DNA of 64,000 nucleotides, taken from NCBI RefSeq assembly GCF_964204645.1, contig NC_134030.1, positions 12,855,947-12,919,946 of the forward strand, written 5' to 3'. The translations under genes and the position numbers were made by a program. This DNA comes from Tubulanus polymorphus. Lineage: Eukaryota > Animalia > Nemertea. Numbering within the stretch: position 1 is the stretch's first letter; the number at the start of each line of letters is the position of its first letter. This document shows, piece after piece, positions 12,351 through 44,248 of the stretch. The notes beneath the pieces were generated by a model. The model was not told the origin of the DNA. It searched no databases and saw only the letters and a list, made by a program, of their open reading frames with translations.

Positions 12351-14263
12351 CTGAAGATAATTACAAGAAGATAATTTGAGATAATAAGCAGACAATTGAC
12401 AATAAATCATAAACAAAACAACATTGTTAATATTAAGGCTATAATATGAATAGGTCGAAGTACGTAGATAGAAGTAGGGAGATTCGAATGCAAGAAAGAA
12501 TGTTGGTAATGTAATGAAATGTTAGATACGTAGGAACTGACAGAATCTATCATATCGTGATATGATTTAGGATATCTCATTTCTCATATCATTTCATTCA
12601 TCCACGCCAGCTATTCCTTTAAATTACAAAATCCATCAGGCTCAAACACAGGAGCAGTTATTGGTGGGGTTATTGGACAAAGTGATGGAGACCAGGGAAC
12701 CTGCGATTGATTTAGTAGGGAGTCAAGATATAAAGTCAGAAAGTCAGACACACGTTTTATAGTGTGGATTTCCTTGTATTTAGTGAAAAGAAATATTCCC
12801 CAAGGTAAAAATCCCAACCGAATAAATTCCCCAAGTTGGAGTTAACAACAATGTATCAACATCTTTATAATGAACGACTTAGATTTCACAATTGTATTAA
12901 CTCTAGATGACAATTATTCCTGCGATTACATGTGAGGGAAAAATCTTCAAAAATCTGCAGCAATATGTACATAACTTTTCAAGTTTTTTTTTTATTTCGG
13001 CAAAAGAAATTGGAGCCAAACCATCTTGACAGGGGTTATTATCATCAGCACATTCAGGTTTGATACGTATCATCAATGATATGATAAGAAACTGAATTAA
13101 AGAGAATCTTTACCAGGGGGATTTCAACTGTTACCTGAAATGAAAACATTAAGGGATCAGTTATCAAACTGACTCCAACCTCCCACGTACAGAATAACCG
13201 GACATCCAAATGGGGTAACATCCGTCCATCTTGGGACGATGTAACTAGCTCCTGTGATGTCTAGCATGAACTACCTTTGCAAATCGAATTCACGCATGAT
13301 ACGTATGATATAGTTTTGAATCCTTAATATCATACCTTTTGAGTAACCATTCTGATGACTCATGATATCATTTGCTTATATAGGTATGATATCATTGGTC
13401 GTTTTACTGGTGGAAATCAGCGGGGTTTTAATGGTATTACAACGAGAGTCAAACCTGTCTTCAAGTTATTGAATGATAAAAAATTGCGGCTTTGTGAAGA
13501 GGGAAACGAAAATGACATCTCACTTGAAATTTGATTTGGCATGCAACGATTTACAACATAATGCAATACAACATGAGTCTACTATAAACACAGTGTACTA
13601 AGCACATAATCTTGATATGCAGAAATGTTCCACAAATAAATAGGATGAAAAACGAATTTGATAAATAGTATACGAGAAATATAGAAAGTTTACTACCAAC
13701 CTTGTTTAGTCTAAAACGATGTACGAGTAAGAATACGGATTAAAATTACATTATTACACGAATCAGTGCACATAGTTAGTTGATAAAAATAACAGCAATG
13801 CCGTATTGTGAAATCAGTTTCTTGTGAATTACAGTGAGTGGATATGCCGTATTGTGAAACCAGTTTCTTGTGAATTACAGTGAGTGGATATGAAAGCAGA
13901 TATTTTAGAATGTGATTTTATGTGATTTTACGAGTGGGATTTTAATCGGGGATATTGACTGGAGGGACTTCGACCTGCGTTCACAATTTTTCGCTGAACT
14001 GCTTAGATTTCTTAATTTTTCCACCGGTTTCTTTTTTCCTAGCGTGAGCTGATATTATACGTTGAATCTAGTCCTTCGAGGAGTGAATTGAACAGTAAAA
14101 CGTGAGGTGTAATAGAGTGACTAGATTATTCCCATAAAGCGGCAGAGAATACCAATATTTTGATTCCCCATAAAACCTCAGGTTAGGAATAAAATATACA
14201 CTGTAACTAGAACTAAGTACTAACCATTGCGATGATAGATTATAACTAAAGTTCATATTTTAC

Positions 14264-14377
14264 CGAGTTCAGGTGATCTTGTTTTGAAAAGTCATATGAT
14301 TCATACTTAGACTTGAAGGTTTCCAATATTTCACTATGCCGAGCCATATCGGTCGCTAATATAAGCATAATGATACC
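14264..14377 (-). CDS. PDE9A: PDE9 exon 13b, alternative ([38 protein letters not shown])
   Basis: CAG/GTAAA, 114 nt, phase 0-0; [10 protein letters not shown] motif. Confidence 0.92.
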
Positions 14378-16029: not shown

Positions 16030-18101
16030 ATTAGGAATATGCGGACGTCCCTTCTCTCCAAATAACTAGTTTCGCCAAGTCTTTATTTTGATTAAACGTC
16101 ATTTCAACAATGCGCTACGTCAAAACGTTGAAACATTAGGTGCCAAGACCGCACGGATACAAGTCATATTGTTCGGGTTCTCTGCTTACGGCAGAAAACA
16201 CCACGACTCATTGCCTTCGCTAAAAGCAGAATATCGTTATATCGTAGAATATCGTTAGGTTATACTTGGGTGTATATTTCTGTGGTAAAAACAATAAGTC
16301 ATATGACCTTGATACTTCATCGAGATGATCTGAAGTTCCGAAAGCCGTGTGAACACGTTAGGGACCGTACAAAAATAAGATAATACTCCACAGCCATAAA
16401 AGCAATATTTTCGTAGTATCAAATACTTGTACAGTGGGAATACTTCAGATTTTTGCCCTTTAGTCCCAATCATCGCGATTATTTTCTGAATAGAATTGAT
16501 TTGGATTGAATTTTTGAATAGCGGTTAATTTCTGAATTGATTTAGATTGATCTTTTAATTACTGCACGGATTAAATTTACTTTTTTCGTGAACATCTATT
16601 TGTCAATTGGATATGGGCACAATATATTTATCTTTGATTGCCATTCAGGCAATTTGTGTAACAGTGGTATGTTGGTGATGGAGGTAATTTTTGTTGTTGT
16701 TGTAGTTGTTGTAACAAAATTTATTTAGGGGTATTTACCAACACAGCACGTAATTTCATTGACTCGCTCTACCTGTGATGCATGAGTGTTCCAATTCATT
16801 TGATAAGTAAAAACTTAGTGCGTTTCACTTGTATTTGAAAGGGTGATTTGCCGTTCCTTAAATGCCGTTCCCGTCATTACGCCATTAGTTGTTATGATGT
16901 TCGGAGGATTTACTTCTACGTTTTGACAATACACTTTCAAGTTGTACACAAAATCAGTCTATCGTGTGATAGAAACATTTTGACGGGAATGGTCGCCCAT
17001 ACATATTCAAACGGATCATCACCAACGTACTATACGTACTCAAATTGGTCCTAGGAAAAATAGATCGCCTATGAACTTCGTGAACCACGTTGTACCCTTC
17101 CGGGTAAAAAGGGAATATAGGAGCCTGTGATATCTAAATACCGAGTTAAGTCACATTGATCTGTATTAGGCCAGCCGTAGGCTAAGCCTATTACTATACA
17201 AATGGAGGGAATTTAAATAAAATGGTTTCCAGAGCAAAGGCTCTTTGTCCGTGGAACTGAGCATATATTCATACAAATCATTCAGTAAAGCATTATCCAT
17301 TCTCCAAACTGTACGTAGCTGAATTTTGAAAGAGGGCCTCGTTAAAATTTATATGAGCTTTTTCGCGAATATCTGATCCCAAAAATATGTGTTTTGAAAA
17401 GCCAATCAGAAAGCAAGGCTCCTCTATGATTGGCTTAGCCGCAGAAATATGCAGGTGTTCACGTGAACCCGCGGTATCGTCTACCGTTTTACTTCCTGGT
17501 TTTATTCTTAGATCTAAAATTGTATTTCAAGATCGATTTCTGTGAAAGCTTTTGTTAATTTGGTTTTTTGGAGGAATATTTTTGTTGCCACTACAGAAAA
17601 TATCATTGACCATTTTCGGAAAAAATAGCTTTTTCTTAAATCGGATAGATGACCTTGATATGCTAATTAGCCATGTGCTCAAACTACAAATTCAATCAAA
17701 TTTTATTCTGCAAAGAATATCAAATCCAATTCAACTTTGTTCTATTGAGCAAATTTCAGAAAATTCAATTTTATTCCGCATTAAAATCAATAAGACCAAG
17801 GAAAAAGATTTATCTGAGGTATTTGTTCCTGCCAGATCCAGTCGCTGTCTGTGCTACTTTTGTATTCTACGATTGTAAGTGTAAATTATTAGGTATTGAC
17901 TCTCAGCTGGGAGTGTATTTTGACAAATTTAACCCACAGAATGCATCATCATTTGCCATTTTATGAAAAGCTGACAGGCTGGCCATAGTGCCCCTTGGGG
18001 CTCTTGTTGTATCATGCATGTGTGCGAGAGGTAGAACAAAGACATTACATAGATTACAAATAACAATTAACTCTTATCATCCAATACAACGATTAGCGTA
18101 C

Positions 18102-18218
18102 CGGATCGGTGTGATCCTTCTTCACAAAGTCAAAACCTTCGTCTATTTTCTGCTTGAAACATTCCATTATGTCAGCATGGCGAGCCATATCCGTAGCGAG
18201 GATCAGGGTCGTTATTCC
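18102..18218 (-). CDS. PDE9A: PDE9 exon 13a, alternative ([39 protein letters not shown])
   Basis: TAG/GTACGC, 117 nt, phase 0-0, open; second [10 protein letters not shown] copy. Confidence 0.9.
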
Positions 18219-21004
18219 CTAGCATCAAAGCAACATTTGACATGTATTTAGATACGATTGACAAACAGGTTTCGTGTCGGGAAGTGGCTGCTGATAGAAT
18301 TATCTGTGCATCTTACTAACGTCCTTCAATAAGAATCAATTAATTGGAATTAAGTTCATACATTTGGCCCAGATCAAAAACCGATAATAGTAGCTCTTTG
18401 CTGAAGTCGACATCGTATGTTAAAAATCATAAAAAGAAAGATGGATAGAATCTTGACTTAGGAAAAATGTCCTAAGTTTAAACCAGAAAGAAACTTTCCA
18501 CGATTGGTTTCAGTTAACATTCCTAGTGCTTCTGGCGCAGCGAACCTTTCCTGGAAGAGATACACACTCACCACTTTATGAATGGCACAACCAGCCCATA
18601 CCTGCTCTAACATTTTATATACTCTATGTATATAGTATTTAGATATTGTTGTTGAACGAACAAATAATCTAGACAAGAGGAGTACGCATAGTCCCACGTG
18701 TTGCAATACCGTAAGGCATACGTAAGGCATAATTGTTTGGCTGATGTTGTCGGGATTGCCTGCACCAGTCATTTTTAATGTTTATATGAATGAAGACGCT
18801 ACCGACCCTGTTGTGTCCGGCAGCAAGGGGAGGTGAAGCCGCTACTCTTCCCGATGGCAAATCTCCCACAGTGACCTACGTCAATTCCGTTGTGGAATGG
18901 TCATGACCCGAATGATCATTCGCGCTCAATACGTCATCGCGGTCAGCTCGCGGTCGTGTTCACCGCCCCAGTGGTCTTCAATAACAATTTTTGCAGAGTT
19001 CATATTGGTAAGGGTTATTGCAAAATTTATGGACGAGACTCAAAGTGAAAAACAAACCAGGTGTTTCCCTAATGTCAGTATGGTGGATTTGCCATCACGT
19101 TGTTAGTTAACGTGCACAATAGATAAAATGACCTCGTATATAGGTAGCGCTACTGACCGGTCTAAGCAGCCTTTTGAAAAATCTTTTAAAAATCAAGTGG
19201 CAGGATGTGTGATATTGGTGACGTATACTGAAAAGCAGATATATACAACATGAGAACTACCCTAACGGCGAACCCCGTACAATCCCATGCATTGCCCCGG
19301 CTCAGTGACAAGTCGATGGCACGTATGGAATTCTTGGCCATTAACTCTGAAATCAAATTTCCAAAAATTGGGTGGAATATCGGAGTCTTGTAAACTCTCT
19401 AAAATGTGAATGAATACGGGACGAGTTTGTTTGATCAAACAATGTCAAAAATAGGTCTCATATATTTCATTCTAGAATGATGAGGACAAGTCTCGAATGC
19501 CCCAGACCTGAAATTCACCGCCATATGTGAAGTTGCAGGGTTTGTGGTAAATGCGTAGGGAATGGAGGTATTCAATAATTTTTCGGAAAACTGCGCAAGT
19601 CTAAAATAAGTCCAAAAGATAATAGCGCACATCCTCCTTGTCACAAACATGATAACCAGGGGATAGAAAACAATCTGCATTATAGGATTGGCTTCATGAG
19701 TCAAAAACAATACAGCTCGCCCTCCTCGCTTCGAATCGAAAATCAATAGCTGTAGATTGCGGAGAGGAGGCAAGGTCCAGCCTGTTTCGCATATGTGTAT
19801 TTCATATATTGGATGACTTACATATGTCAAAAACAATAGGGCTACTCCAACCTCAAACCCTAACCTGAATACAAAGTTATACGAAAATCAGTTTTACGGA
19901 AAACTGCACCAGTAACAGCGCACACCCTACTCATGTCACAAAGTTGATTACCAACAGGAACAATGTGCAAAGATCATTTTACACACATAGCTGTGGAACG
20001 CATCTTGGATTACCTACATACGCAAAATCCATTTCCTTTTTGAAACCCACTTTTAAAAAACTATTGAAAAATCTGTACAACTTGTACAATGTAGAACCGG
20101 GACAAGGTCGAAAGTGTAAATTTTGCACACATATATGGTCTTGGTGGCCTCCACCTACGTCAGTCAAAAGTAATAAGGCTGATCTTCCATTTGGCCCTAA
20201 CAAATAATAAGAAAGTTGACTGTAGTGTGGGACCCCGGTGCAACATGCCCATTTCACACAACATGGTTTAGGCATCCATCTTCGCTTACCTCCGTGAGTA
20301 AAAGAACAATGGAGCTCACCCTCCTCTTATCGAATCGGAAACCCAAGTAATAAGAAAATTGGCCCGAAACTGTTGACTGTGGAGAGAGGACAACGTCCTA
20401 AATGCCTAATCATGCTAAATATACGCATTTCACATTTTGAATGTTTTACATAATCTAAAAACAATAGGACTTCCCGTCTTACCTGAATACAAACTCATAA
20501 GCAATAATGTTAAAATGTAGACTGCAGGGTGGGAACAACATATTCTCCCCCGTTCAATCGCCTAGCAAGATGGGCTGACCAGCACAGGCGAACACAATCT
20601 CCTTTACAGCTAAGATAATCAGTCGCTTGCCAGTCTAGGCTGATTAGAAGTTTGTTTGAATGAATCAGAACCGAAATATCCAATGAAGAAAATTGTGCAA
20701 TTGTGACCGCCGATCACAAAACAATATTTGCACTTCGATTTCCGATTTCAAAATCAAACCCCCTGTTTCGCACCCGGGAGGTGTGGTGGGCTTGTACGGG
20801 AGACCAAATCAAAATAAATCAAACGAAATTTACTAATTAAATGAATGACAGGGGCAATCCCTATCTCAGGAGGAACAAAAGACCGAGGGGATACAAGAAT
20901 ACACGATTTAATAAGCATCTATTGTTTCTACATTCAAGTTAAGGCTAATCCTGTAGATTTTACTTACATCCCCAATTTAAAAAGTAGCTTTTAAAGTTTC
21001 TTAC

Positions 21005-21161
21005 CGATCTTATTCGTTTGAACGTATCGTTGTCAACATTCGAAAATATATTGCATTCCGGATTACTTAGGATCTGAAAAGCTACTGCACAATGGTGATT
21101 TTCCAGTGGTGATATGTCATTATATCGAATAGCCAATTCCGTTCGGGCATTTATTTGATAC
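21005..21161 (-). CDS. PDE9A: PDE9 exon 12 ([52 protein letters not shown])
   Basis: CAG/GTAAG, 157 nt; SPLENHH motif. Confidence 0.97.
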
Positions 21162-21280
21162 CTGAAAATAAAACAGCAAAACCCTGAATTCAAGTATTAA
21201 GATACATATGCCCTCTCCAACAAGGGCTTATAAGACCTAGCATGACGTTTTGCCATAAGAGACAGCTGGGAGGTCATCTT

Positions 21281-21948
21281 GACGTATCGGCCCCACTCCG
21301 CGCGGTGGCGCCACCGCGCGGGATTTACGCGAAGCAGCAAACACAAACATGGCCACTCTCTCAATTTTCAATGATAGAAATCGTGTGTGCATTTCAATTA
21401 TTTCGGCTGTTAGGGTTTTAAGGCACAATATAAAGTGATGATGTGATATGGCGATGTTAATTAATGATAATTCCGCAGTGAAGCTAGTGACGAACGGTGC
21501 CGATTGAGTGTACAGCTGCCAAAAACACTGAAATGTGCGTGGTTGCGTAACTATTTGCAGTGAATTGCAGACGGAACATGAAGCCTTAACGGCCGTTTAA
21601 AAAAAATTATACCAATCGCAATTGTAAAATAAAAATGAGATAGAACCTAAGTTAAAATTATGGCCATTTCTAAAATGTTATTACTAATTTTTAGTCAGTG
21701 CCGAACGTTTAGTTTTCCAACAATAATGAGGGGTGGTAGGTAGTCATGCAATTCAAGTCATCATTTATTACACGTTACTTCCGTGTTGTTGAAAATCTCG
21801 CGAGTCCTGGACCAAACCCCAATGAACAATGCGATCTGTGTGCCGGCCACAAATGCACATAGATCACACTACACTACCCATTACACACTCCAGTACCCAC
21901 AGCTTTCATATATCCATCCAAATATTTAGAGTGTCTTTCTTCCTGGAT
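21281..21948 (+). repeat. ~665-bp interspersed repeat; inverted copy at 49827-50492
   Basis: Near-identical reverse complement; contains a 24-bp GC palindrome at 21298-21321. Confidence 0.9.
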
Positions 21949-23654
21949 TCAGTTCGATTCGTGTGCTACACATGATAACCATATATCAGGACATTTCGTC
22001 TGAGTGTAGTGTATTATACTTTCCTAAGGGCAAAAATCCGTCTATAGACGGACGGACGACAAACAGAACTAGAGGTTCAGGGACACCATGCCCACTTGGG
22101 AATTGGTTTCAAATACTCAATAATCTAACAATTTCAATATTCAACGCTCCTTGGTGGCCATATACTGAAACTGATGATCTTCACCACGATCATCGTACAT
22201 GTCATGAGTCACGAGTTACAATTTAGCAATTTATTGTGGTAACAAAAGATGCCTAGGTACCAAGATGATATGGAAATAATATGTTATTCTACTATTCAAC
22301 GTCTCCTGGTGATCGTATACAAAAACTAATCAATTTGAAACGCACTACTATCATAGAACGTCTTGAGCTACAATTTTGCAATTGATTGTTGTAACAAAAT
22401 ATTCTTAGGCACCAATATGATATGACGAAACTAATTTATTGTTCGATTCAACGCCCCTTAATGACCATTTACAAAAACAAATGACCTTGAAACTCACCAC
22501 AATCATAGAACACGTCATGCGCTAAAAACTTTGCAATTGATTGTGGTTCCAAAATATGCATTGGTACAAATATAAGTAGAGAAATTTATATTAATCAATA
22601 TATATATCTGGTGGCAAGAACAGAATTTCCATGTGAGGAGGTTGATTCCTATGACAGTGCTTATGAAATTCAAATATCAAGATTATAAGTTAAATCTGTT
22701 GATATTTTCCTCAAAAACCTTTTTCCACTTACGAATGAGTACTGATGACACTAAGATGGCCGCCAATTGTGCAATAAATGGCTTATCAAAAATACCTGTC
22801 TGATAAATTAAAGATCCCTTTTCATAGAATACCCACCACATATTCCAATGAAAAATAGCAAACCATTTAGAAGCTACAGGACTTAGAATTGACATTTTTG
22901 CCTCTCATGCAGATAATATTATATTCGATTATGAACCATGGGCTTAGAGGTTAACAACAACAATACACGCTCATATACGCAGGAGATCTTACCTGGTTCA
23001 GCCTGTTTACACGTTTCTTTAGTATAGAGTCAGAGTTCAAAAATAGCAAGCAACCGTATATATGGGAGATAAATTTGCTATGACATGAATGAGTAGGGGC
23101 CGCTTTTAAACTTGTATTGACTTAGACATGGGGCTAACCCAGTGTGGTAATCGAGGATTCCACTCATAGCAGGCGAGGACCCACAAGGTTCGATAGTAGT
23201 TACTCGGTCTTCTGCGTTCGGTTTTTTTTACATAATTCAATTGTAAATGTAAACCATACCGATATCTGAGTACAGAAATGAATTCATCGTATATCTGGTG
23301 GGTGCTGTGATAATATATGGATTCGGGAATCTTAAAGTTTCAATTCAATGAAAATGAACTTATTTTGACAGCGTAAGACCGGTGCTCGTCATGCCATCTG
23401 GTGGGATAGCTGGTATTGCGGATTCCCCATTGACTATTATAACAGGTTTAAAAATTGGCCCGGCCATAATCCAAGATAAAATCAGAAAAATTGTTGTTGG
23501 ATAGATCAAAATGTGGTATGAATACTTATCAACACGTTCATGTGAACATTTATACGAGTAAAGGAATGATATCAAAGAACTCTTCCGACGGGCAATCGAG
23601 TGATGAGAAGGTTTTGCTTGACAATAACACGTGAATATAAGAAAGAAAACTTAC

Positions 23655-23842
23655 GTGTTGTTGTACCCAGGATGATCTAGATCGTGGCAAACTGCAGCCG
23701 TTATGAGAATTCCAAGATCCTCGCGTGACATTTTATCCCAGAGTTCGCAAAGGTGTATGATACCGTACATCATTTGAGAAACGCAAAAACAATGTCTAAA
23801 ATTGTGGAATGGGTTGTTCCGATAGTTTTCCTGCACACAAAG
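23655..23842 (-). CDS. PDE9A: PDE9 exon 11 ([26 protein letters not shown]...[12 protein letters not shown])
   Basis: CAG/GTAAGT, 188 nt; class I PDE signature [10 protein letters not shown] and PDE9-type [10 protein letters not shown]. Confidence 0.98.
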
Positions 23843-24002
23843 CTGAAATGAATTGATGCTAAATACAGTTGGGCAGTTCGGGTAATCGTTATGTATTATT
23901 TGTGCAGGTTTTTACTTAATACAAAATTTCCCACTAGAAATACTCTTGAGTATCTTACAATAACGTTCGGGAGCATAGATGGCAACCATAAGAAAGACTT
24001 AC

Positions 24003-24089
24003 CAGCCATCTTTTCAAAGTAATCGGGTTAATGTTAAATTCGTTGACCAAGTCAAGCTCGTGGAACATGTGTTCTAAAAGGCTAAGCAT
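24003..24089 (-). CDS. PDE9A: PDE9 exon 10b, alternative ([29 protein letters not shown])
   Basis: CAG/GTAAGT, 87 nt, phase 0-0; close to vertebrate MLSCLEHMYHDLGLV..NPVTLRRWL. Confidence 0.95.
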
Positions 24090-24322
24090 CTGAAATGTGA
24101 ACTATGTTCTGAATTATTGGTGCAAAAATATGATCTACTTACTAATTTTGTTTATTCGGGCCTACTCTCGACCAACAGTCACATCATAGTGAGCAGTGAT
24201 ACTATGAAACAGTGCTAGGACCAAGGATTATAAACCGAAAGCTGAATATTATCGTCGGTCATCATTCTGAAAATTCTATTCGCTGTCTATATAGTGATTT
24301 CGACGACAGCCTAAGGTCTTAC

Positions 24323-24409
24323 CAAAAAATTCCTTAATTTTTCAGGATCGATATTCAATTGGTAAACGATATCCAATTCGTAGAACATATGTTCTATTAG
24401 CAATAAAAG
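24323..24409 (-). CDS. PDE9A: PDE9 exon 10a, alternative (LLLLIEHMFYELDIVYQLNIDPEKLRNFL)
   Basis: TTTTCAG/GTAAGA, 87 nt, phase 0-0, open; ungapped paralogue of 10b. Confidence 0.85.
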
Positions 24410-24513
24410 CTGAAAATATTTCAAATACAGCTTTTTGCTTTGATGTCATCATATGAGCTATATCGTTTTACTACTACGGTTTAAGGAATCAGTTGAATTG
24501 ATTTCGTTCTTAC

Positions 24514-24588
24514 CTCGTTTGGTTCCCAATGCCATATATCAAAAGTAGGTGTTTTTAGGTAGTCAATTGTTTCCTGAGAAAGGGTGTA
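24514..24588 (-). CDS. PDE9A: PDE9 exon 9 (YTLSQETIDYLKTPTFDIWHWEPNE)
   Basis: TTTTTAG/GTAAG, 75 nt; matches PTFDVWLWEPNE. Confidence 0.95.
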
Positions 24589-25165
24589 CTAAAAATAAGA
24601 TAGATATCATCAAATACTATTATGTATATGCCATAAAAGCCCATTGAGATCACATGTATGATAGCACAAAAGAAAAAATCATTTTCATGCCAGTTTGCCG
24701 TAGGAAACAATGAAATCCGTCTCTTGATTTGCGGGAAAGTGATAAATAAAAACACATTAAAGTGAGAAGATTGTGATACTTAATAACATATCTTAATTCT
24801 TATTAATGAATTTCTTCAAAATGATATAAAATTCATGCATATTATCTTTAATTATAACGCCGGGTTTGCTCAACTATTCAATCGAACACGGCAAAGATAA
24901 AAGCTGTTTATTAATCTACTCACTCAAGCTCGTCGAATGATAGGTGATTAACAAGAGTCGACTAGTTAGAAATCGGTTGCAACGATTGTTTGATGTCTAG
25001 CATGCTACCTTTTTCGCGTGACATCACAGTGCACCAGTAGGCCGTTAAACGCAAGCGGATATTTGATGTAAACGTTACGCTTGACTACCATTTGACTACC
25101 AAGATAGCGTATGTGAACAATATGCGTTGTGTCTGTGAATGTAGTGTACATATACATGTGCTTAA

Positions 25166-27543
25166 AGGTCATTGGCTCATTTAATTTTGCAAATTTCTGT
25201 TTCAAATTGTTAATATAATCCTATTAACCTAAAAAAACATTTCTCATCAGAATTCTACCGAGTTATTATGGTGACGCGCCTATATAAATGTTTAAGACCA
25301 CGATGTTTGTCAGTAAAATGTTTATTGATCTCATTCGCACAAAAGGCGTCTGCTGCAGATACTGCTACACATTCGTCGAGGCACGTTTTATTTAGATCGC
25401 TCCTCGTATTCTAGCTACAGAATACCCGCTAAACAGCAGATTTATTTGGACTGCGATTCGACCCAGTCCGAAATTATGACCATTTATTATTACACAGTTT
25501 TAGCAGAGTGAATTTAAGCGAACTTCGGTTATCGCAGTCAGTCGAATTTAAAGATCAAGTAGCGCTTAATTATAGTTTTTATTTTGAACGATAAATTATG
25601 TTGCGTACATACATAATAATCATTCTAGAGAATTTTAGCTGTAATGAGTGATGGATTTCTGAAATATTAATGATTGAAAATTGTATATTTGAAGGAATTT
25701 TTACATCGCGTAGTTCATCTGATACCCATGAAGATGGCGCTGATGATGATGCAATAGGGTCTACACGCTGTATTCACATCAGCGCGAACTCCTAGCTACA
25801 TAAGATATTTATGGTAGCACAAGTCTTAGTTATCCCTGTTTGTCTTACATGACCTGCTTTTTGTGTAAAGTACAAACATGCAGTGCGCGCACGTTACGAC
25901 CGAACTAAGTGCGTACGGTTATTAGTTACGACCACTAGTCGAATGAAAACCTAAGTTCGCATAGAATGGTTAGATTAATTGATAATTTTCACAATAAAAG
26001 TTATTTCTTTACTTGTCGTTCGGTAAGCTTGCTGTAAATCTAATTTCCCAACCAGTGATTTGATCTGAAGATTGTCGATGATAAACGATTTTTACACTTG
26101 ACATCAGTTTTTTCAATCGGAGATGCTGCCAATATTTTATCCACGACCAAATGTCAATTTAGGGATTCAAAATATAAATCGAAAACAACAATTTTCATTA
26201 TCTTGTGTTATACACTTAAATCTGATACCATTCGGTTTCAAGTATATATTTGAATTGACTCATTGGTCTGGCAGTTGATGTTTTCCGGAACCAGTCTGTT
26301 TCGTAAACCGAACTATATATGTATAATCCGGCGTTTCGGGGTTTAGCGGTTATCCATTAAAATACAGCAATAAAGTCTATTCACAACGAGTTGACGTGCG
26401 GCTTTTTGACCACAGGGGTATCAGTTTACAGTAGTGAACTGTGTTGCAGGGGTGCATGCTGAGCCAGTTAAGTGGCTTGTTGCTATGGTTTTGTACACAA
26501 ATTCAGCAAGAGTGAATAACTAGCAAGATTTCACAAGACATGCAGTCTTAGGAATATAGAAGAATTTAAGTTTATCTTGTTGTTTTATACACTCTTATTG
26601 AATGTTGACGTAGAGTTGATGGATGGCAAGGCCTGGCAGTGATCCAGATAAAATAGTTGCAGTTGTTAGAAAGGAGAGAATTTTCGAGGATTTTGCTCAT
26701 TTCACAGAATATTCAACGAAAGAAGATATATCTGGGTTTAACACATGTCAAGTCACATATTTTTGTAACATATTTTCACAGAGCTCTAGGCATTTAGACA
26801 ACTGATATTTTCGTGGTTTTCACTCATAGAGAAATGGCACTATATTATATCTAGATAATAAGATGGCACAGATTGAACTCCAATCTATCCAGTCATTCTC
26901 TTTTGCGGATGCATCCATATTATATAGTTTGAATCTGATTCAGACGAAGAATCATCGCTGGTATTTATAATGAATTCGTCAACCAAATCATTTGCATTTT
27001 AAACTGACTTGTGTAATATTAAAGAACCGAGTGGTTGGAGATGCAAGTTATGTGTGTGTGTAGTTATGCACTCTTGGTGGACGCTGGGCTGCAGTGGGTC
27101 GGCACATCTGTGATGGATCATTTGTGTAGCAGCTATCTGACAGCTCACAGCAGTAGCTGCTCTTTGATGTGGAGAAAAAGCCGCACGTCAACTCGTTGTG
27201 AACAGACTTTACATAAATAACACTGTTCAATGTTCATAAGATCATCCTCTATAGCTATACAATGATGCCGTTTTAGAAATTATGATATCAAATAGAGATA
27301 CAGTCGATTAAAAGATGTGAGCTATGTTATCAACGCGTTATTTGCGATGTTGAGCGAATCAAATGGCGTCATGAATCGCCGCTTCAAACAGTAGACCAGA
27401 TGTTATGCGTTGGAAGCAACGCTGATCAAATCCTGTAATGTATTATTTTCTATTCTTCACTAAAGCAGAATTCAAGCATTAGCGTAATGACTTCGTCCAT
27501 CTATTAACTGTTGATTTTTTTTCTATGTATGAGCTAATGACCT
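25166..27543. mobile_element. Non-autonomous Kolobok-type DNA element
   Basis: TTAA on both sides (25162-25165, 27544-27547); 15-bp TIR AGGTCATTGGCTCAT / ATGAGCTAATGACCT with 1 mismatch. Confidence 0.7.
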
Positions 27544-31265: not shown

Positions 31266-31323
31266 CTTTGGATACATGGGTATATCCTTTTTCAGTGTAA
31301 TCTTGTTATTTTCATTGATAAAA
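31266..31323 (-). CDS. PDE9A: PDE9 exon 8 (FINENNKITLKKDIPMYPK)
   Basis: TAG/GTAAA, 58 nt; aligns with vertebrate FLDNHKKLTPRRDVPTYPK; phases fit exons 7 and 9. Confidence 0.85.
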
Positions 31324-34300
31324 CTATTGGAAAAGAGTCAGTATGTCCACATGAAACAATTTTCTTGAGCATCATCTTAGATTGTGATTTATCATTAGCA
31401 GCAAGTTAATGTGATGATCATTATGTATTCATATTTTTCATGTTTAATGATGATAATAATCATATTAAATCATTTATATTTTAATTAGTGCGTGAACTTG
31501 ATTAATTACACCAATCAGTTTTTTCGGATTAAAAAAATGCAACAAACAATCAACGTTAACCATCTTTTTATTAACCGGAGCTGATTAGACTGATTATCTT
31601 CTTGTACATTCCAGCGGAATCTTGATTTAAACTATTAGTCTAAGCAAATGCTCTCGGTCTGGGCGCTAATCCAGATCAGCGATTAACAAACGACTCAAAC
31701 TTTGTACTCCTATTGCTTCAACTAGTCTATACTATCAAACGTGCAACTATCATCTCAACCTTGAGATGAGCGACATTCAAGCAATTGCAATCTTGTGCTC
31801 ACATTGAGTCATCCATTGAGAGACTATTTCAAGAACAACCGAAAAACCTCTCGCCCAAACAACAAAGTAGCAGATGAACCCGGAACTTCCTCAACATAGC
31901 AGTTGTCACGCAAATTAGCGTAATCAAACCAATGGCATGACAATGCAGACAATGCATTGCATACATTTTTAAAATCTCATGGCTAAAAATGATATCTTGT
32001 TTCTCCGCATCGGCTGGGTTGGCAAAAATCATACAGAAAGTTTGTAAAAGAAAAATCCCGGCGGCCGGGTCCGACTTCGAATTTAATCATAAATAAATAT
32101 AGCCTACCAGGTGTAAATGAATCTCAATTTGAACTAATATTTATATGACTTATTGCACACGAATCAAAAGGAAATTCAAAGAATCGACACGCGCACACGC
32201 GTGTTACGGAAGGAGTTCAGTGTTGGGGTTTCTTGTCTTTGACAATGTAGAACCATATTGACCATTCGCTTGTTACTCTTGTCTTTACTTGCCTTTCAAT
32301 ATCCAAATTTGGAAAATCGATTTTAACTAGAAAAATTAATTTTTGATAAAAATGAAATCCCGACTGCCTGGTGCAGAATTTCAACAAATTTGTGTTTTTT
32401 TCAACCAGAAATAGTAATGATTAAAAACACCTGTCTGCTTGGTCACTTTGGTGGGTAGAAAAGGAGAACCAAGGTATCATTTTTAGCCTTGTAAATTGTT
32501 TTTGAGAAAACAGATGTTCGCGATCGCAAGGCCTGCCTTTTCTTTAATTACTTGGAGTACGGGTCTTCCGCCTTAAATTCTTCCACATGATAACACTGAA
32601 TTATTGGGTTTTTATCAATATTTGCCTCTCTGTTTTCGATCTCATGATTCGTAAAAATTGGTTTCGTCATTCACCTATCATTTCAATACAATCAATTTGT
32701 GCTTTGAATCTAATTTTCCAAGCGAGAGCAAATGGTTTCACTAAGAATAGCGGCCATTTATTATAGGACAACTGCGTTTTAATCGTTTTATTTTGGCAGT
32801 CTTCCTAGATTGTATGAGGAACATACTCCGATCAAAAATATATATTTTTCATTCGTGTATGTTTCAACTTACTTGCGTGCATAGAATCGTAAGTTTAAGG
32901 TAGGTAAACCTTTTCTAACATAAAGCGCTATGATCATTTCAGTTATGGACTATATAAGCAAATGAGTTGTCGTTATTATCATTATCATTATTATCATTAT
33001 TATGTATTTTGAATTTGAGATTCATTTCGAGGTTAATGAAAAAAGATTGAGAGTGTAAAACTGTCTTAGAATCTGTTCATTGGTCCTCAGAATTTCTTTG
33101 AAAGAAACGGCACCATTTGATAAACGATGTTATATGTAAATATGATGTATTCTATCTTTGAAACCGATCCGTTCAAAATATTTCAATTTCCGAGCAATTC
33201 ATGATTTTGTCGCGCATTTTTTCCTCAATTCATTTGACTCAAATGTATCAAATCGAAGTTATAACGTTCGATGAAGCTAGCCAACATGTATATACTAACT
33301 ACTAGCTCGGGAGAAGGAGATCCTGGATACAAATAATGAATAAAACCCAATGAAACCTTCAACGATATGAACGGCATATCCTAGGGCTCCCATCTGGAAT
33401 TCAGAAGAGGCGGTAAAGCGGTTCATCAGTTAATCATCACCATTGGTCTGTTGACTTCCAAAAGCCCAAAAGCATGGGGCTTTGAATCTGTATGCGAATG
33501 CCAAAAAATCATTTTTCTACAGAAGTGCTTTCTGGGTCTTCCCAACTCACTACGTCCAAGACCCGATAAAAACCTTTTTGTCCCGCAGAATCGAGTGTTC
33601 CAAAAGACTTATTAGTCCGTTTATGGTGAAAGGTGCATTGAGTGTAGACATTCACTATAGCGCACTTGGTTGACTAATTGTGCTGAATACCGTGGTGCGA
33701 ATGATACATCCTTAACAGAGTATTCACAGTTATGATGAAAAGTCTTATCACTCGATGTATAGATCGATTTGAGTGCGTCTATATTCTTGAAAGAGTCGAC
33801 ATGATTATGATTTATAATGGAATCACTGAATGATTTGACAGACAAAATGAGTGCCACAGCGACTCTTTGTCGTTTGTTAGAATATTTCCTGAAAATCTCA
33901 TTCAGATATAAGAAATCGATTTCAATCGCAATTTATTGGTGAATAAGAAGAGATTCTTTAAAGAAATGAATCGCCTTCAAAATATGTTTGTCAGCAAAAG
34001 AAATGCATCATAAAAAAATTGAATTTCCATCGAAATACATTCCTATGCCTAAAATATTATTGCGCGCGCTGTGATTGTGCCGGCACAGTAGTGCTTATGT
34101 ACCGTATATATGAAATGTTGATCTCATATTCTATTACAGACACAACAACTTCTATCCGTTATTCTGGCCCTCTTATTTTGATCTGCGGTAGGTTCATGTA
34201 GATGGCTGCTTTCACATAACGTGAAGGGCATGGCTTTTAAACTAAGCTCTACCGAGAAAGACTTATATTGACATAGATAAGACGAAGCGGGAGGCCTGAG

Positions 34301-40837: not shown

Positions 40838-41350
40838 ATAAAATAGAAGGACGGCGCACCAGCTATAAGATCGAAGGCCCCACTGATAACAGCCGTTCGC
40901 ACTGTATTTGCAAGTGCGCGCTGATCAGGTGCGCGTTGTTACGAGCAACTGGCTAGCGTCTCGTTTCCAGGAACAGAGTTACGGGAATGAGCAAGCGTAA
41001 TAGATGCTATTTATATACGTAATAGTCGTGCGCAGTCGTTGCAATAATAAAGATGGCCATGTGCTTGGCATTTTAGTGAAAATTTCTCGAAAATACGTCA
41101 ATTTTTAGCGAATCTACGGCACATCAAGTGACGGATGCACATCATAACATTTTTCAAAGTTAAGGTGAATAATATAAAGACAAATTTCTCATAGTCACAC
41201 TCGTTTCCTCCATTTTTGAATTATGCATTTAAATGAAGAAATAGCTCATCTTTTAGCTAGTCCACATGGTTTGAACGCCAAATGATGCCAAAGTGAAAAC
41301 GTTAGAAATGGAAATAACGTGGCCGTAATTATTTCTAGATAAGACAATCT

Positions 41351-43197
41351 TACGGAAGCGATAAGGGGCCTCGAGATGTCCCGTTCTAAGTCGACAAGTC
41401 GTCATATTTATGTCGACATACCGTGATATATCGCGTCAAGTCGATATGAATATGTCGATATATCGTGACGTTTTCACGACATATTTCATTTTCTCGACTA
41501 CGGAAGCGATAAGGGGCCTCGAGATGTCGCGTTCCAACTCGACAAGTCGCCATATTTATGTCGATATATCGCATCAAGTCGACATGAATATGTCGACATA
41601 TCGTGACGTTTTGACGACATATTTCGTTTTCTCGACCACTTTCCTCGCGACAAGTCGACATATTCATGACGACTTGAAATTCAGTCGTCATATCACTGGT
41701 CTGGTGTCCTCTACGGAAGCGATAAAGGGCCTCGAGATGTCGCGTTCAAACTCGGCAAGTCGCCATATTTATGTCGATATATAGACATGTCTAAATGTAA
41801 GATGAGGACGCCAGTAATATGACGACTGAGTTTCAAGTCGTCATGAATATGTCGACTTGTCGCGAGGAAAATGGTCGAGAAAACGAAATATGTCGTCAAA
41901 ACGTCACGATATAGCGACATATTCAAGTCGACTTGACGCGATATATCGCGGTATGTCGACATAAATATGACGACTTGTTGAGTTTGAACGCGACCACTCG
42001 AGGCCCCTTATCGCTTCCGTAGTCCTCATCTTACATTTAGACAAGTCTTCAAATGATTACGGAAGTACGGAAGCGATAAAGGGCCTCGAGATGTCCCGTT
42101 CCAACTCGACAAGTCGCCATATTTATGTCGACATACCGCGATATATCGCGTCAAGTCGATATGAATATGACGATATATCGTGACGTTTTGACGACATATT
42201 TCGTTTTCTCGACCACTTTCCTCGCGACAAGTCGACATATTCATGACGACTTGAAACTCAGTCGTCATATCACTGGTGTCCTCATCTTACATTTAGACAT
42301 GTCTTCAAATGACGGCTTGTCCCGTGGAAAATGGGCGAAAAAGCGAAATTTGCCATATTTATGTCGACATATCGCGATATATCGCGTCTAGTCGACATGA
42401 ATATGTCGACATATCGTGACGTTTTCACGACAAATTTCGCTTTTTCGCCCATTTTCCACGGGACAAGCCGTCATTTGAAGACACGTCTAAATGTAAGACT
42501 AGGACGCCAGTGATATGACGACTGAGTTTCGCGAGGAAAGTGGTTGAGAAAACGAAATATGTCGTCAAAACGTCACGATATGTCGACATATTCATGTCGA
42601 CTTGACGCGATGTCAAGTCGACATGAATATGTCGTCATATCGTGACGGTTTCACGACAAATTTCGCTTTTTTGCCCATTTTCCACGGGACAAGCCGTCAT
42701 TTGAAGACACGTCTAAATGTAAGATGACGCCAGTGATATGACGACTGAGTTTCAAGTCGTCATGAATATGTCGACTTGTCGCGAGGAAAGTGGTAGAGAA
42801 AACGAAATATGTCGTCAAAACGTCACGATATTTCGACATATTCATGTCGACTTGACGCGATATATCGCGGTATGTCGACATAAATATGGCGACTTGTCGA
42901 GTTGGAACGCGACATCTCGAGGCCCTTCATCGCTTCCGTACGACTCGCCTCTCGAGCCTCGAGATGTCGCGTTCCAACTCGACAATTCGTCATATTTATG
43001 TCGACATACCGCGATATATCGCGTCAAGTCGACATGAATATGTCGATATATCGTGACGTTTGGACGACATATTTCGTTTTCGTCTTCATGTCTTGAAGCG
43101 ATATATCGCGGTATGTCGACATAAATATGACGACATGTCGAGTTGGAACGCGACATCTCGAGGCCCCTTATCGCTTCCGTACTTTATCGCTTCCGTA
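41351..43197. repeat. Complex palindromic array of CpG/GTCGAC-rich modules with TACGGAAGCGATAA termini
   Basis: Terminal motif in direct orientation (41351, ~41499, ~41712, ~42067) and inverted (~42021, ~42940, 43181, 43197). Confidence 0.85.
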
Positions 43198-43907
43198 AAA
43201 AGGTCCAAAACGAATTGTTAAACAGTTTGGCTATTCAGTCGCTGGAATTAATCGATGGTTATCATATGAGTAAAATCTTAGTTCGGCTATCGGATTCTGT
43301 ATATACACGCCTTTTTCATTTCTTCTCGGTTTTTATCGTATCTTTCCACTTTGAAGCCGCCAATTGTGTTTAGTATTTACAGTGTCGTTGACGGTCGCAA
43401 AAGATCGGTAGGTTCGATTTCAAGATTCGAGAAATATCGATCGACATTTTGGATAATCAAAATATTCTTAATTTCGATCATAATCCTTCGTAAAATAACG
43501 CTGTTTTACTGATTTATGCAGATTGAATAATTAGCATCCGAAATTATATTTCTTGGTTTAAACATATCTTTGCAATCAATTGAACAGTAAGCCAAGTGGA
43601 TTCAAGGGTATTTTGTAAAATTTCATATAGCAATGGACGATAAATCCTGATTGGTGATTCTTGGATTTTAGCAACCGCATTTATCCAGAACTCGGTTGTA
43701 TCATTGGAGTGTAAACTAATGAACGGCATAAAACGTAATTATTTGCGGTAAACCGTGTAACAAGATACAGGCAAAAGCTCATTAAATCTGGTACTATTAT
43801 GCGTTAATTAACTATTCCACGCTGAGACGACCCAACGGGTGCAACACAATGGATTGAGATGTGCTGGACTATCACACCGGGATTCCTCGAATCAATTATG
43901 TAACTAA

Positions 43908-44122
<215 letters not shown>

Positions 44123-44248
44123 TTACGAAATGATATGATGCATGATACATCGATACTACATTCTTTGATCCTCTTTCGCAAACCTAGCCAGGCCATTGAA
44201 TTAATAGTATGCTTCATGAACAAAAAGAAAGACAGTGACCAAATTTAA

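What the first reader, a model, noticed from the sequence alone, without database searches (positions are those of the whole stretch)
24003..24409. Second duplicated exon pair 10a/10b at the start of the PDE9 catalytic domain
Seen: two 87-nt phase 0-0 exons 233 bp apart with canonical sites align without gaps: LLLLIEHMFYELDIVYQLNIDPEKLRNFL and [29 protein letters not shown]. With 13a/13b this gives 2x2 possible catalytic domains. Both are multiples of 3, so NMD cannot enforce exclusivity and a steric or RNA-structure mechanism is implied. A related motif (GCTCATATGATG ~24447-24458; GCTCACTATGATG ~24182-24194, read on the minus strand) precedes each exon. It may be a branch point or selector; I found no matching docking site. 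I know of no description of such a cassette system in PDE9 but cannot search the literature.
Basis: partly seen in the sequence, partly recalled or inferred. Interest (0 to 1): 0.8.

Follow-up and report, generated by a model that had tools for sequence, protein, structure and literature searches.

The report
Duplicated exon 10 in worm PDE9
An invertebrate (probably ribbon-worm) gene for the cGMP-degrading enzyme PDE9 holds two tandem copies of one 29-codon exon: the standard copy is seen in mRNA, while the old, diverged copy looks selectively maintained but was not seen in RNA, so it is a likely though unproven either-or splicing switch of a familiar kind.

Summary
On the minus strand there are two 87-nt, phase 0-0 exons: 10a at 24323-24409 and 10b at 24003-24089. 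They lie 233 nt apart, have AG/GT sites and align without gaps (15/29 residues). They sit between PDE9 exon 9 and exon 11.

- **10b** is the orthologue of human PDE9A residues 211-239. It is the copy present in the only RNA-like run, in a spliced contig reading 9-10b-11-12.
- **10a** was not seen in RNA, though contigs cannot show absence. It is absent from Lineus, oyster and Owenia, and not detected in a gap-rich Aplysia locus.
- **Selection on 10a:** third codon positions are randomised (8/29 identical) while second positions are kept (23/29). A neutral-decay simulation never reproduced this (0/4000 at each divergence tried). So 10a has been a selected coding exon for most of its history.
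chance level (509/2000 shuffles). I found no docking/selector pairing.
- **Closest parallel:** amphioxus has an independent tandem pair of the same exon, annotated as alternative isoforms, with a 59-62-nt intron (steric type).

Verdict: a probable lineage-specific pair of mutually exclusive exons, with usage of 10a unproven and the exclusivity mechanism unknown. This scan earlier noted the 13a/13b pair in the same gene.

The parts
24514..24588 (-). PDE9 exon 9 (75 nt, ends ...TPTFDIWHWEPNE, phase 0)
   Evidence: Sequence. 88% identical to the Lineus PDE9 protein by tblastn. About 77 nt are covered by the X4 spliced contig by depth arithmetic.
24410..24513 (-). Intron 9-10a, 104 nt, GTAAGA...TTTCAG
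24447..24458 (-). It holds a CTCAT branch-like site 45 nt upstream of the 10a acceptor, with AGs at -29 and -22 in between.
   Evidence: Its similarity to motif 2 is at chance level (509/2000 shuffles).
24323..24409 (-). Exon 10a: the diverged upstream copy, 87 nt, phase 0-0, open frame, AG/GT sites. Not seen in RNA contigs.
   Evidence: X4 depth is zero in the bin 24300-24499.
24090..24322 (-). Intron 10a-10b, 233 nt
   Evidence: Too long for simple steric exclusion. No Rfam family matches.
24182..24194 (-).
24003..24089 (-). Exon 10b: the canonical copy, orthologous to human PDE9A residues 211-239, and the copy present in the spliced RNA contig
   Evidence: E 2e-9 to PDB PDE9A chains. (X4 depth 3.72 = 8.55 x 87/200). 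(word share 0.27 fits exons 9 + 10b + 11). (near-identical across Metazoa).
23843..24002 (-). Intron 10b-11, 160 nt
23655..23842 (-). Exon 11 (188 nt; [17 protein letters not shown]...[10 protein letters not shown]-), where the Pfam PDEase_I match starts
   Evidence: E 3.6e-16. X4 record 17 joins it to exon 12. The boundary was refined.
21005..21161 (-). Exon 12 ([23 protein letters not shown]...)
18096..18218 (-). Exon 13a (context only; it is the subject of the earlier finding s1-526982)
   Evidence: Lineus and oyster isoforms carry one or the other version of this exon.
14255..14377 (-). Exon 13b (context only)

Best explanation
An old tandem duplication of PDE9 exon 10 is confined, as far as sampled, to this worm's lineage. 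Exon 10 encodes the 29 residues just N-terminal to the first metal-binding motif, inside the crystallised catalytic domain.

Exon 10b keeps the pan-metazoan sequence and is the default exon of the main mRNA (shown). Exon 10a has diverged at the family's variable positions and kept every near-invariant hydrophobic position, its frame, its length and its splice sites. This shows it has been translated and selected (inferred from codon statistics).

The most likely use is as a minor or tissue-specific alternative that replaces 10b (inferred). With 13a/13b this would allow up to four catalytic-domain variants.

Exclusivity cannot come from NMD, because both exons are 3n. It does not come from U2/U12 incompatibility, because all sites are GTAAG...CAG. 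It does not come from a too-short intron, because the intron is 233 nt. The sequence gives no support for competing RNA pairing.

I therefore propose regulated exon choice by trans-acting factors (inferred, weak). 10a would be skipped by default. When 10a is selected, 10b would be skipped or repressed. Double-inclusion and double-skip products would be in frame but structurally defective, and so simply rare.
For: - **Anatomy and homology:**
- **10b is the orthologue and is in mRNA:**. X4 record 17 joins exons 12 and 11. The same contig depth of 8.55 accounts for exactly 87 nt in the 10b bin, 77 nt in the exon 9 bin, and nothing in the 10a bin. The word share of 0.27 fits exons 9 + 10b + 11.
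- **Selection on 10a:** identity by codon position is 17/23/8 of 29, dS is saturated and dN is 0.43. In the neutral-decay simulation the joint event (no stop, BLOSUM score of at least 82, at least 21 third-position differences) occurred 0 times in 4000 at every divergence tried.
- **Pattern of change in 10a:** 13 of its 14 replacements are residues used elsewhere in the PDE9 family. They fall at the more variable positions (Mann-Whitney p 0.029), and M8, L12, L25 and L29 are kept.
- **Precedent at this exon:** amphioxus isoforms differ only inside this exon (8 differences, residues 348-372). The tandem pair is present in three Branchiostoma assemblies.
- **Precedent in this gene:** 13a/13b alternatives are annotated in Lineus and oyster.
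Against: - No transcript evidence for 10a. The only RNA-like run has none of it. The contig depth there is only about 8.5, and contigs drop minor variants. A second possible RNA run (X5) has no PDE9 at all.
- No 10a-like exon in the Lineus longissimus locus or in its 13 annotated isoforms. None in Magallana gigas or Owenia, and none detected in the Aplysia locus, which is 46% N.
- About 90 annotated isoforms from eight other lineages carry a single version of the exon.
- No protein fragment containing 10a was found in the word search, which covers lengths of 24-77 aa only.
- A recent death of 10a cannot be excluded by the selection test.
- The proposed trans-factor mechanism is a default by elimination, not something observed.
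Confidence: 0.6

Rival explanations
1. 10a is a relic. It was once a functional alternative exon but is no longer spliced into mRNA in this species (a recently silenced pseudo-exon). The gene now makes only 10b forms.
For: - Only the 9-10b-11 form is seen in the RNA-like run.
- 10a has no counterpart in any other species examined.
- Its acceptor has a modest pyrimidine tract (11/20) and two upstream AGs at -29 and -22.
Against: - The frame is open, the length is exact, and AG and GTAAGA are intact.
- The neutral model is rejected for the bulk of its history, so any silencing would have to be recent.
- The 10b acceptor is no stronger, also 11/20.
- Contig data at depth of about 8.5 cannot exclude a minor isoform.
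Confidence: 0.22
2. 10a is used, but not in strict exclusion with 10b. It would be an ordinary cassette exon giving an in-frame 29-residue insertion (9-10a-10b-11), or both exons could sometimes be skipped.
For: - Both exons are 3n, so every combination stays in frame.
- The 233-nt intron between them is long enough to be spliced.
- No enforcing element was found.
Against: - A tandem repeat of this helix-loop-helix segment next to the metal site is unlikely to fold. Gene models that include both copies look like ab initio artefacts, for example the amphioxus 'partial' protein P0159.
- 10a keeps the same hydrophobic pattern as 10b, as expected for a replacement rather than an addition.
- The X4 contig shows 10b without 10a.
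Confidence: 0.1
3. Exclusivity is enforced by competing RNA secondary structure (docking site and selectors), with the reader's GCTCA(C)TATGATG motif acting as selector.
For: The motif occurs upstream of each copy at the stated coordinates.
Against: - The motif similarity is at chance level, 509/2000 shuffles.
- Intron-intron duplex energies are no better than shuffles, with 136-192 of 200 shuffles as good or better. The fold of the 801-nt cluster has z = +0.39.
- Inverted repeats are only 10-17 nt at 82-90% complementarity, about what chance gives in AT-rich sequence.
- No related species carries the pair, so covariation cannot be tested.
Confidence: 0.06

Closest known systems
Amphioxus (Branchiostoma) PDE9A-like exon pair, as annotated in RefSeq isoforms
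   Same: The very same exon (the 29 residues between ...WEPNE and [13 protein letters not shown]) is tandemly duplicated, 87 nt each and phase 0-0. Isoforms of equal length differ only inside this exon. The pair is present in three assemblies.
   Different: - The intron between the amphioxus copies is 59-62 nt, which is steric-exclusion range. Here it is 233 nt.
- Both amphioxus copies stay close to the canonical sequence (21/29 identical to each other). 10a here is far more diverged (15/29).
- The duplications look independent, because no copy is specifically similar across the two phyla.
- Amphioxus use is annotated. Here use of 10a is unproven.
Exon 13a/13b pair of the same PDE9 gene (earlier finding s1-526982)
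   Same: It is in the same gene, is a tandem duplicate of a catalytic-domain exon, and both copies are intact.
   Different: The exon 13 pair is shared with Lineus, Owenia and oysters and is annotated there as alternatives. The exon 10 pair is not found in those species. The 13a-13b spacing is about 3.7 kb, against 233 nt here.
Classical tandem-duplicated mutually exclusive exons, such as alpha-tropomyosin exons 2/3 (steric) and Drosophila Dscam1 or 14-3-3zeta clusters (docking/selector RNA pairing). From general knowledge.
   Same: Adjacent homologous exons of equal length and phase that encode interchangeable versions of one structural segment.
   Different: None of the four textbook enforcing mechanisms fits the sequence: a short intron, U2/U12 incompatibility, a frame shift with NMD, or competing RNA pairing. 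Exclusivity itself is not demonstrated.
Human PDE9A splice variants. From general knowledge: many N-terminal variants.
   Same: The same enzyme family. 10b aligns residue for residue with human PDE9A 211-239.
   Different: To my knowledge, human variation lies in the N-terminal region, not in the catalytic domain. My searches found no paper describing mutually exclusive catalytic-domain exons in PDE9.

Membership tests
PDE9-type cyclic nucleotide phosphodiesterase gene | PDEase_I catalytic domain with PDE9-specific sequence | tested here: met
   Exons 11, 12, 13a and 13b hit Pfam PF00233. 10b hits only PDE9A chains in the PDB at E 2e-9. Exon 11 is 81-92% identical to annotated PDE9A-like proteins and loci.
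Mutually exclusive exon pair from tandem exon duplication | Two adjacent exons homologous to each other, with the same length and phase | tested here: met
   87 nt each, phase 0-0, 15/29 residues identical, the only two matches in the genome.
Mutually exclusive exon pair from tandem exon duplication | Both copies have functional-looking splice sites and open frames kept by selection | tested here: met
   AG/GTAAG on both. Neutral decay of 10a is rejected, 0/4000 at each divergence. Replacements are compatible with the family.
Mutually exclusive exon pair from tandem exon duplication | Transcripts contain one or the other copy, never both or neither | tested here: inconclusive
   9-10b-11-12 is seen in the X4 contig. 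10a is not seen. The data are contigs only, at depth of about 8.5.
Mutually exclusive exon pair from tandem exon duplication | The pair is conserved in related species | tested here: not met
   Single exon 10 in the Lineus, oyster and Owenia loci, and only one detected in the gap-rich Aplysia locus. One version per species in about 90 annotated isoforms. No closer relative (another palaeonemertean) was available.
Steric-hindrance type of exclusive splicing | The intron between the two exons (or the donor-to-branch-point distance) is too short to splice, roughly 60 nt or less | tested here: not met
   The intron is 233 nt. The only distal branch-like site (CTCAC at -101) has nine AGs before the acceptor. 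Amphioxus, by contrast, has 59-62 nt.
Docking-site/selector competing RNA structure type | Intronic elements complementary to one shared docking site, beyond chance or conserved | tested here: not met
   Duplex energies and the fold z-score are no better than shuffles. Inverted repeats are short and at chance level. The motif is at chance level. Conservation could not be tested.
NMD-enforced exclusivity | Exon length is not a multiple of three, so that double inclusion or double skipping shifts the frame | tested here: not met
   Both exons are 87 nt = 3 x 29.
U2/U12 spliceosome incompatibility type | One flanking intron has U12-type splice sites | tested here: not met
   All three introns start GTAAG and end CAG. 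None has a U12 donor consensus.

The most novel reading that the evidence does not exclude
This worm lineage independently evolved a second either-or exon switch in the PDE9 catalytic domain, at the same exon that amphioxus duplicated on its own. That would make this helix-loop-helix segment a recurrent target for isoform diversification. With 13a/13b it would yield four catalytic-domain variants. Exclusivity of the 10a/10b choice would be enforced by a mechanism that is not steric, not NMD, not U2/U12 based and not an obvious RNA-pairing one, so possibly a new kind of enforcement.
Probability: 0.3. Interest if true: 0.5.

Novelty: new member of a known kind. Interest (0 to 1): 0.33.

Why it matters
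If 10a is used, one gene makes PDE9 enzymes that differ in the helices joining the regulatory N-terminus to the catalytic core. That gives a natural handle on what this poorly understood segment does, for example in dimerisation, coupling or localisation. The independent duplication of the same exon in amphioxus suggests the segment is a preferred site for tuning PDE9. An in-frame exon pair with a 233-nt intron and no recognisable enforcing element would also be a useful test case for how exclusivity is achieved. If 10a is unused, this is just a well-preserved duplicated exon.

Tried and rejected
1. **RNA evidence.** The single run search gave four holders from one study plus one possible RNA run. 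The single read-laying run showed only contigs. X5 holds nothing of the gene. X4 gives the 9-10b-11-12 contig and no 10a. No further read-level test was possible.
Rejected as chance and, for 10b, as badly placed.
3. **Intron-intron pairing, global fold and inverted repeats.** Nothing beyond shuffles. A first script timed out.
4. **Intronic snoRNA or other RNA family.** This was prompted by the ATGATGA C-box-like strings. There is no CTGA D box in the 10a-10b intron by eye. Rfam gave only a sub-threshold plant miRNA hit, 23 bits against 73.
5. **A second PDE9 paralogue or retrocopy as the source of 10a.** None exists. Only two matches were found in the genome.
6. **A specific orthologue of 10a elsewhere.** The best-scoring segments (a frog PDE9A-like paralogue and marine eukaryote fragments) are as close to 10b as to 10a. 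I read this as convergence on common variable-site residues.
7. **A weak Lineus hit** between its exons 10 and 11 (L004 24431-24514, E 0.17). It has no GT donor and only 32% identity, so I treated it as chance.
8. **Word search for short protein fragments containing 10a.** Blank. It covers lengths of 24-77 aa only.
9. **Joined spliced protein model.** None was built. Exons were searched one by one by reference. So no structure prediction of 10a-containing and 10b-containing enzymes was done.
10. **Failed look-ups.** P0009 and P0309 were not on record in the look-up of encoding contigs.

Full report
**What is there.** The window carries a PDE9-type phosphodiesterase gene on the minus strand. 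By tblastn with Lineus PDE9 proteins it runs from about 48813 down to about 10743.

Around the finding the structure is as follows:
- exon 9: 24514-24588, 75 nt, ending ...WEPNE in phase 0
- intron: 104 nt
- exon 10a: 24323-24409
- intron: 233 nt
- exon 10b: 24003-24089
- intron: 160 nt
- exon 11: 23655-23842, starting [14 protein letters not shown]
- intron: about 2.5 kb
- exon 12: 21005-21161

Both copies of exon 10 are 87 nt and phase 0-0, are preceded by TTTCAG and followed by GTAAG. Their translations align without gaps, with 15/29 residues and 48/87 nt identical. A six-frame search of the whole 268-Mb assembly with 10a finds only itself and 10b (E 0.0047). The pair is therefore real, is a local tandem duplication, and has no paralogue or retrocopy as its source. 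DNA contig depth is flat across the cluster, so it is single copy.

**Which copy is the standard one.** 10b aligns residue for residue with human PDE9A residues 211-239 in the solved structures (E 2e-9). It is almost identical to the same segment in PDE9 of molluscs, annelids, brachiopods, echinoderms, hemichordates, placozoans and vertebrates. 10a matches the same residues only weakly (E 0.46). The segment lies inside the crystallised catalytic domain but just before the first position of the Pfam PDEase_I model, which starts 11 residues into exon 11. So "at the start of the catalytic domain" is right.

**Expression.** The single run search found four holders from one study and one possible RNA run of the same species label. 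When laid on 20900-26899, run X4 behaves as RNA. Its record 17 (782 nt, depth 8.55) joins exon 12 directly to exon 11.

The same depth explains the X4 signal in the other bins exactly:
- 3.72 in 23900-24099, which is 8.55 x 87/200, that is all of 10b
- 3.29 in 24500-24699, which is 8.55 x 77/200, that is exon 9 plus two ambiguous letters
- zero in 24100-24499, which holds 10a

X4's word share of 0.27 is what exons 9 + 10b + 11 alone would give (about 0.28). With 10a included it would be about 0.34.

So the mRNA 9-10b-11-12 exists, and 10a is skipped in it. The pieces for 10b and exon 9 were not printed, so this rests on the arithmetic. Contigs at this depth drop minor variants, so the absence of 10a is weak evidence. 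X5 holds nothing of the gene. X1 and X2 hold the locus with its introns and behave as DNA.

**Is 10a alive?** Identity between the copies is 17, 23 and 8 of 29 at codon positions 1, 2 and 3. Synonymous sites are saturated and dN is 0.43. I simulated the alternative model: 10a decays neutrally while 10b accepts only synonymous changes, for equal time, with intron base composition. The joint event (no stop codon, BLOSUM62 score of at least 82 against 10b, and at least 21 third-position differences) occurred 0 times in 4000 at each of ten divergence values.

Gene conversion cannot explain the similarity, because third positions are at random level.

I compared 10a against 133 distinct PDE9-family versions of this segment:
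- All near-invariant positions (M8, L12, L25, L29, and also L2 and I20) are kept in 10a.
- 13 of its 14 replacements are residues used by other family members.
- The replaced positions are the more variable ones (Mann-Whitney p 0.029).

10a has therefore been a translated, selected exon for most of the time since the duplication. A recent loss of use cannot be excluded.

**Relatives.** A full HMMER search with exon 11 and two word searches gave PDE9 proteins from across animals. Cluster listings gave their isoforms.

- **Lineus longissimus (a nemertean):** all 13 annotated isoforms have the 10b type. In its locus L004, a 493-nt intron lies between exons 9 and 10 with no 10a-like frame.
- **Magallana gigas (L006) and Owenia (L007):** a single exon 10.
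- **Aplysia (L003):** only one copy found, but the locus is 46% N.
- **Eight further lineages, about 90 isoforms:** one version per species.
- **Nothing is specifically closer to 10a than 10b is**.

So the duplication is not shared with any sampled relative. No other palaeonemertean was available. A last word search for short fragments containing 10a was blank (lengths 24-77 aa only).

**An independent parallel.** Two amphioxus RefSeq isoforms of equal length, P0009 and P0161, differ at exactly eight positions, all within residues 348-372. That is the exon 10 equivalent. A second Branchiostoma record set shows the same two versions. One 'partial' model (P0159) strings both copies together. The genomic loci L005, L008 and L009 (the last is B. 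lanceolatum) all carry the tandem pair, with only 59, 62 and 62 nt between the copies. That is the range where the two exons cannot be spliced to each other. The same exon has thus been duplicated and turned into alternatives at least once elsewhere, but with a different architecture.

**Mechanism.** All donors are GTAAG and all acceptors CAG, so U2/U12 incompatibility is out. The 233-nt intron is not sterically limiting.

But 509 of 2000 shuffled intron pairs reach the same alignment score. In front of 10a it holds a branch-like CTCAT at -45, with AGs at -29 and -22 in between. In front of 10b its CTCAC is at -101 with nine intervening AGs, so it is not a credible branch point there.

Best intron-intron duplexes are no better than shuffles, with 136, 192 and 161 of 200 shuffles as good or better. 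The 801-nt cluster folds with z = +0.39. Inverted repeats are 10-17 nt at 82-90% complementarity, about the chance expectation. Rfam finds nothing.

What remains, by elimination and not by observation, is regulated exon choice by trans-acting factors, with 10a skipped by default. Alternatively, exclusivity may be incomplete, with the wrong combinations simply non-functional.

**Comparison and novelty.** This is a tandem-duplicated candidate pair of mutually exclusive exons, which is a well-known kind. The gene family, the homology, the equal length and phase, and selection on both copies are all met. Either-or usage is untested for 10a, and conservation in relatives is not met.

The nearest things are the amphioxus pair at the same exon, which is annotated in RefSeq, and the 13a/13b pair of the same gene. 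That second pair was found earlier in this scan (s1-526982). I saw it as alternative versions in Lineus, Owenia and oyster isoforms.

I found no paper on mutually exclusive exons in PDE9 or in phosphodiesterases generally. I rate it a new member of a known kind, of modest interest.

**Organism.** Another agent's note (s1-487509) names this genome as the ribbon worm Tubulanus polymorphus. I did not verify this. It is consistent with two things. The exons are closest to Lineus among the loci I compared (92/90/92% for exons 9, 10b and 11). The flow-cytometry genome sizes published for that species are 313-358 Mb, against an assembly of 268 Mb (PMC8468679).

**Limits.** Exons were searched separately by reference, so no structure of the 10a form was predicted.

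Noticed in passing
L004 (Lineus longissimus) isoforms P0218/P0219 vs P0220/P0221; window 31266-31325: Lineus PDE9 isoforms also differ in the exon just before exon 9. One version ends ...KISLKRDVPSYPK and the other ...AKKGKLLKRIPDYQK, which looks like a further alternative exon. The window has a match to the first version at 31266-31325. At E<0.05 I found no match to the second.
   Followed up: partly
L005 14586-14630; L006 16244-16270 and 16497-16526; L007 8273-8296: In amphioxus, oyster and Owenia, the intron after exon 11 holds short extra copies of the end of exon 11 (the ...[11 protein letters not shown] motif). The amphioxus copy scores E 2.6e-7. These could be alternative exon ends or relics. 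I did not examine the window for the same feature.
   Followed up: no
window 21100-22900: The intron between exons 11 and 12 is filled with a very high-copy repeat family. Summed contig depth reaches about 1.7e5, against 37 for single-copy sequence, and there are many internal joints in all DNA runs.
   Followed up: no
window about 41300-43200 and 43900-44130: In an upstream PDE9 intron there are tandem or dispersed repeats whose six-frame translations recur many times. There is also a (TA)n-type microsatellite of more than 200 bp that reads as YIYIYI.
   Followed up: no
P0060 (Pelodytes ibericus), P0061 (Xenopus laevis pde9a S homeolog): Frogs carry a diverged PDE9A-like protein. Its exon 10 equivalent shares several of 10a's unusual residues (FY, Q, DPE, NFL). 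It is equally close to 10b, so I read this as convergence at variable sites, not orthology.
   Followed up: partly
window 24090-24101 (upstream of exon 10b): An AG 13 nt upstream of the 10b acceptor would add 12 in-frame nucleotides (FTFQ) if it were used as an alternative acceptor. The X4 depth arithmetic fits 87 nt, so it is not used in the main mRNA.
   Followed up: no
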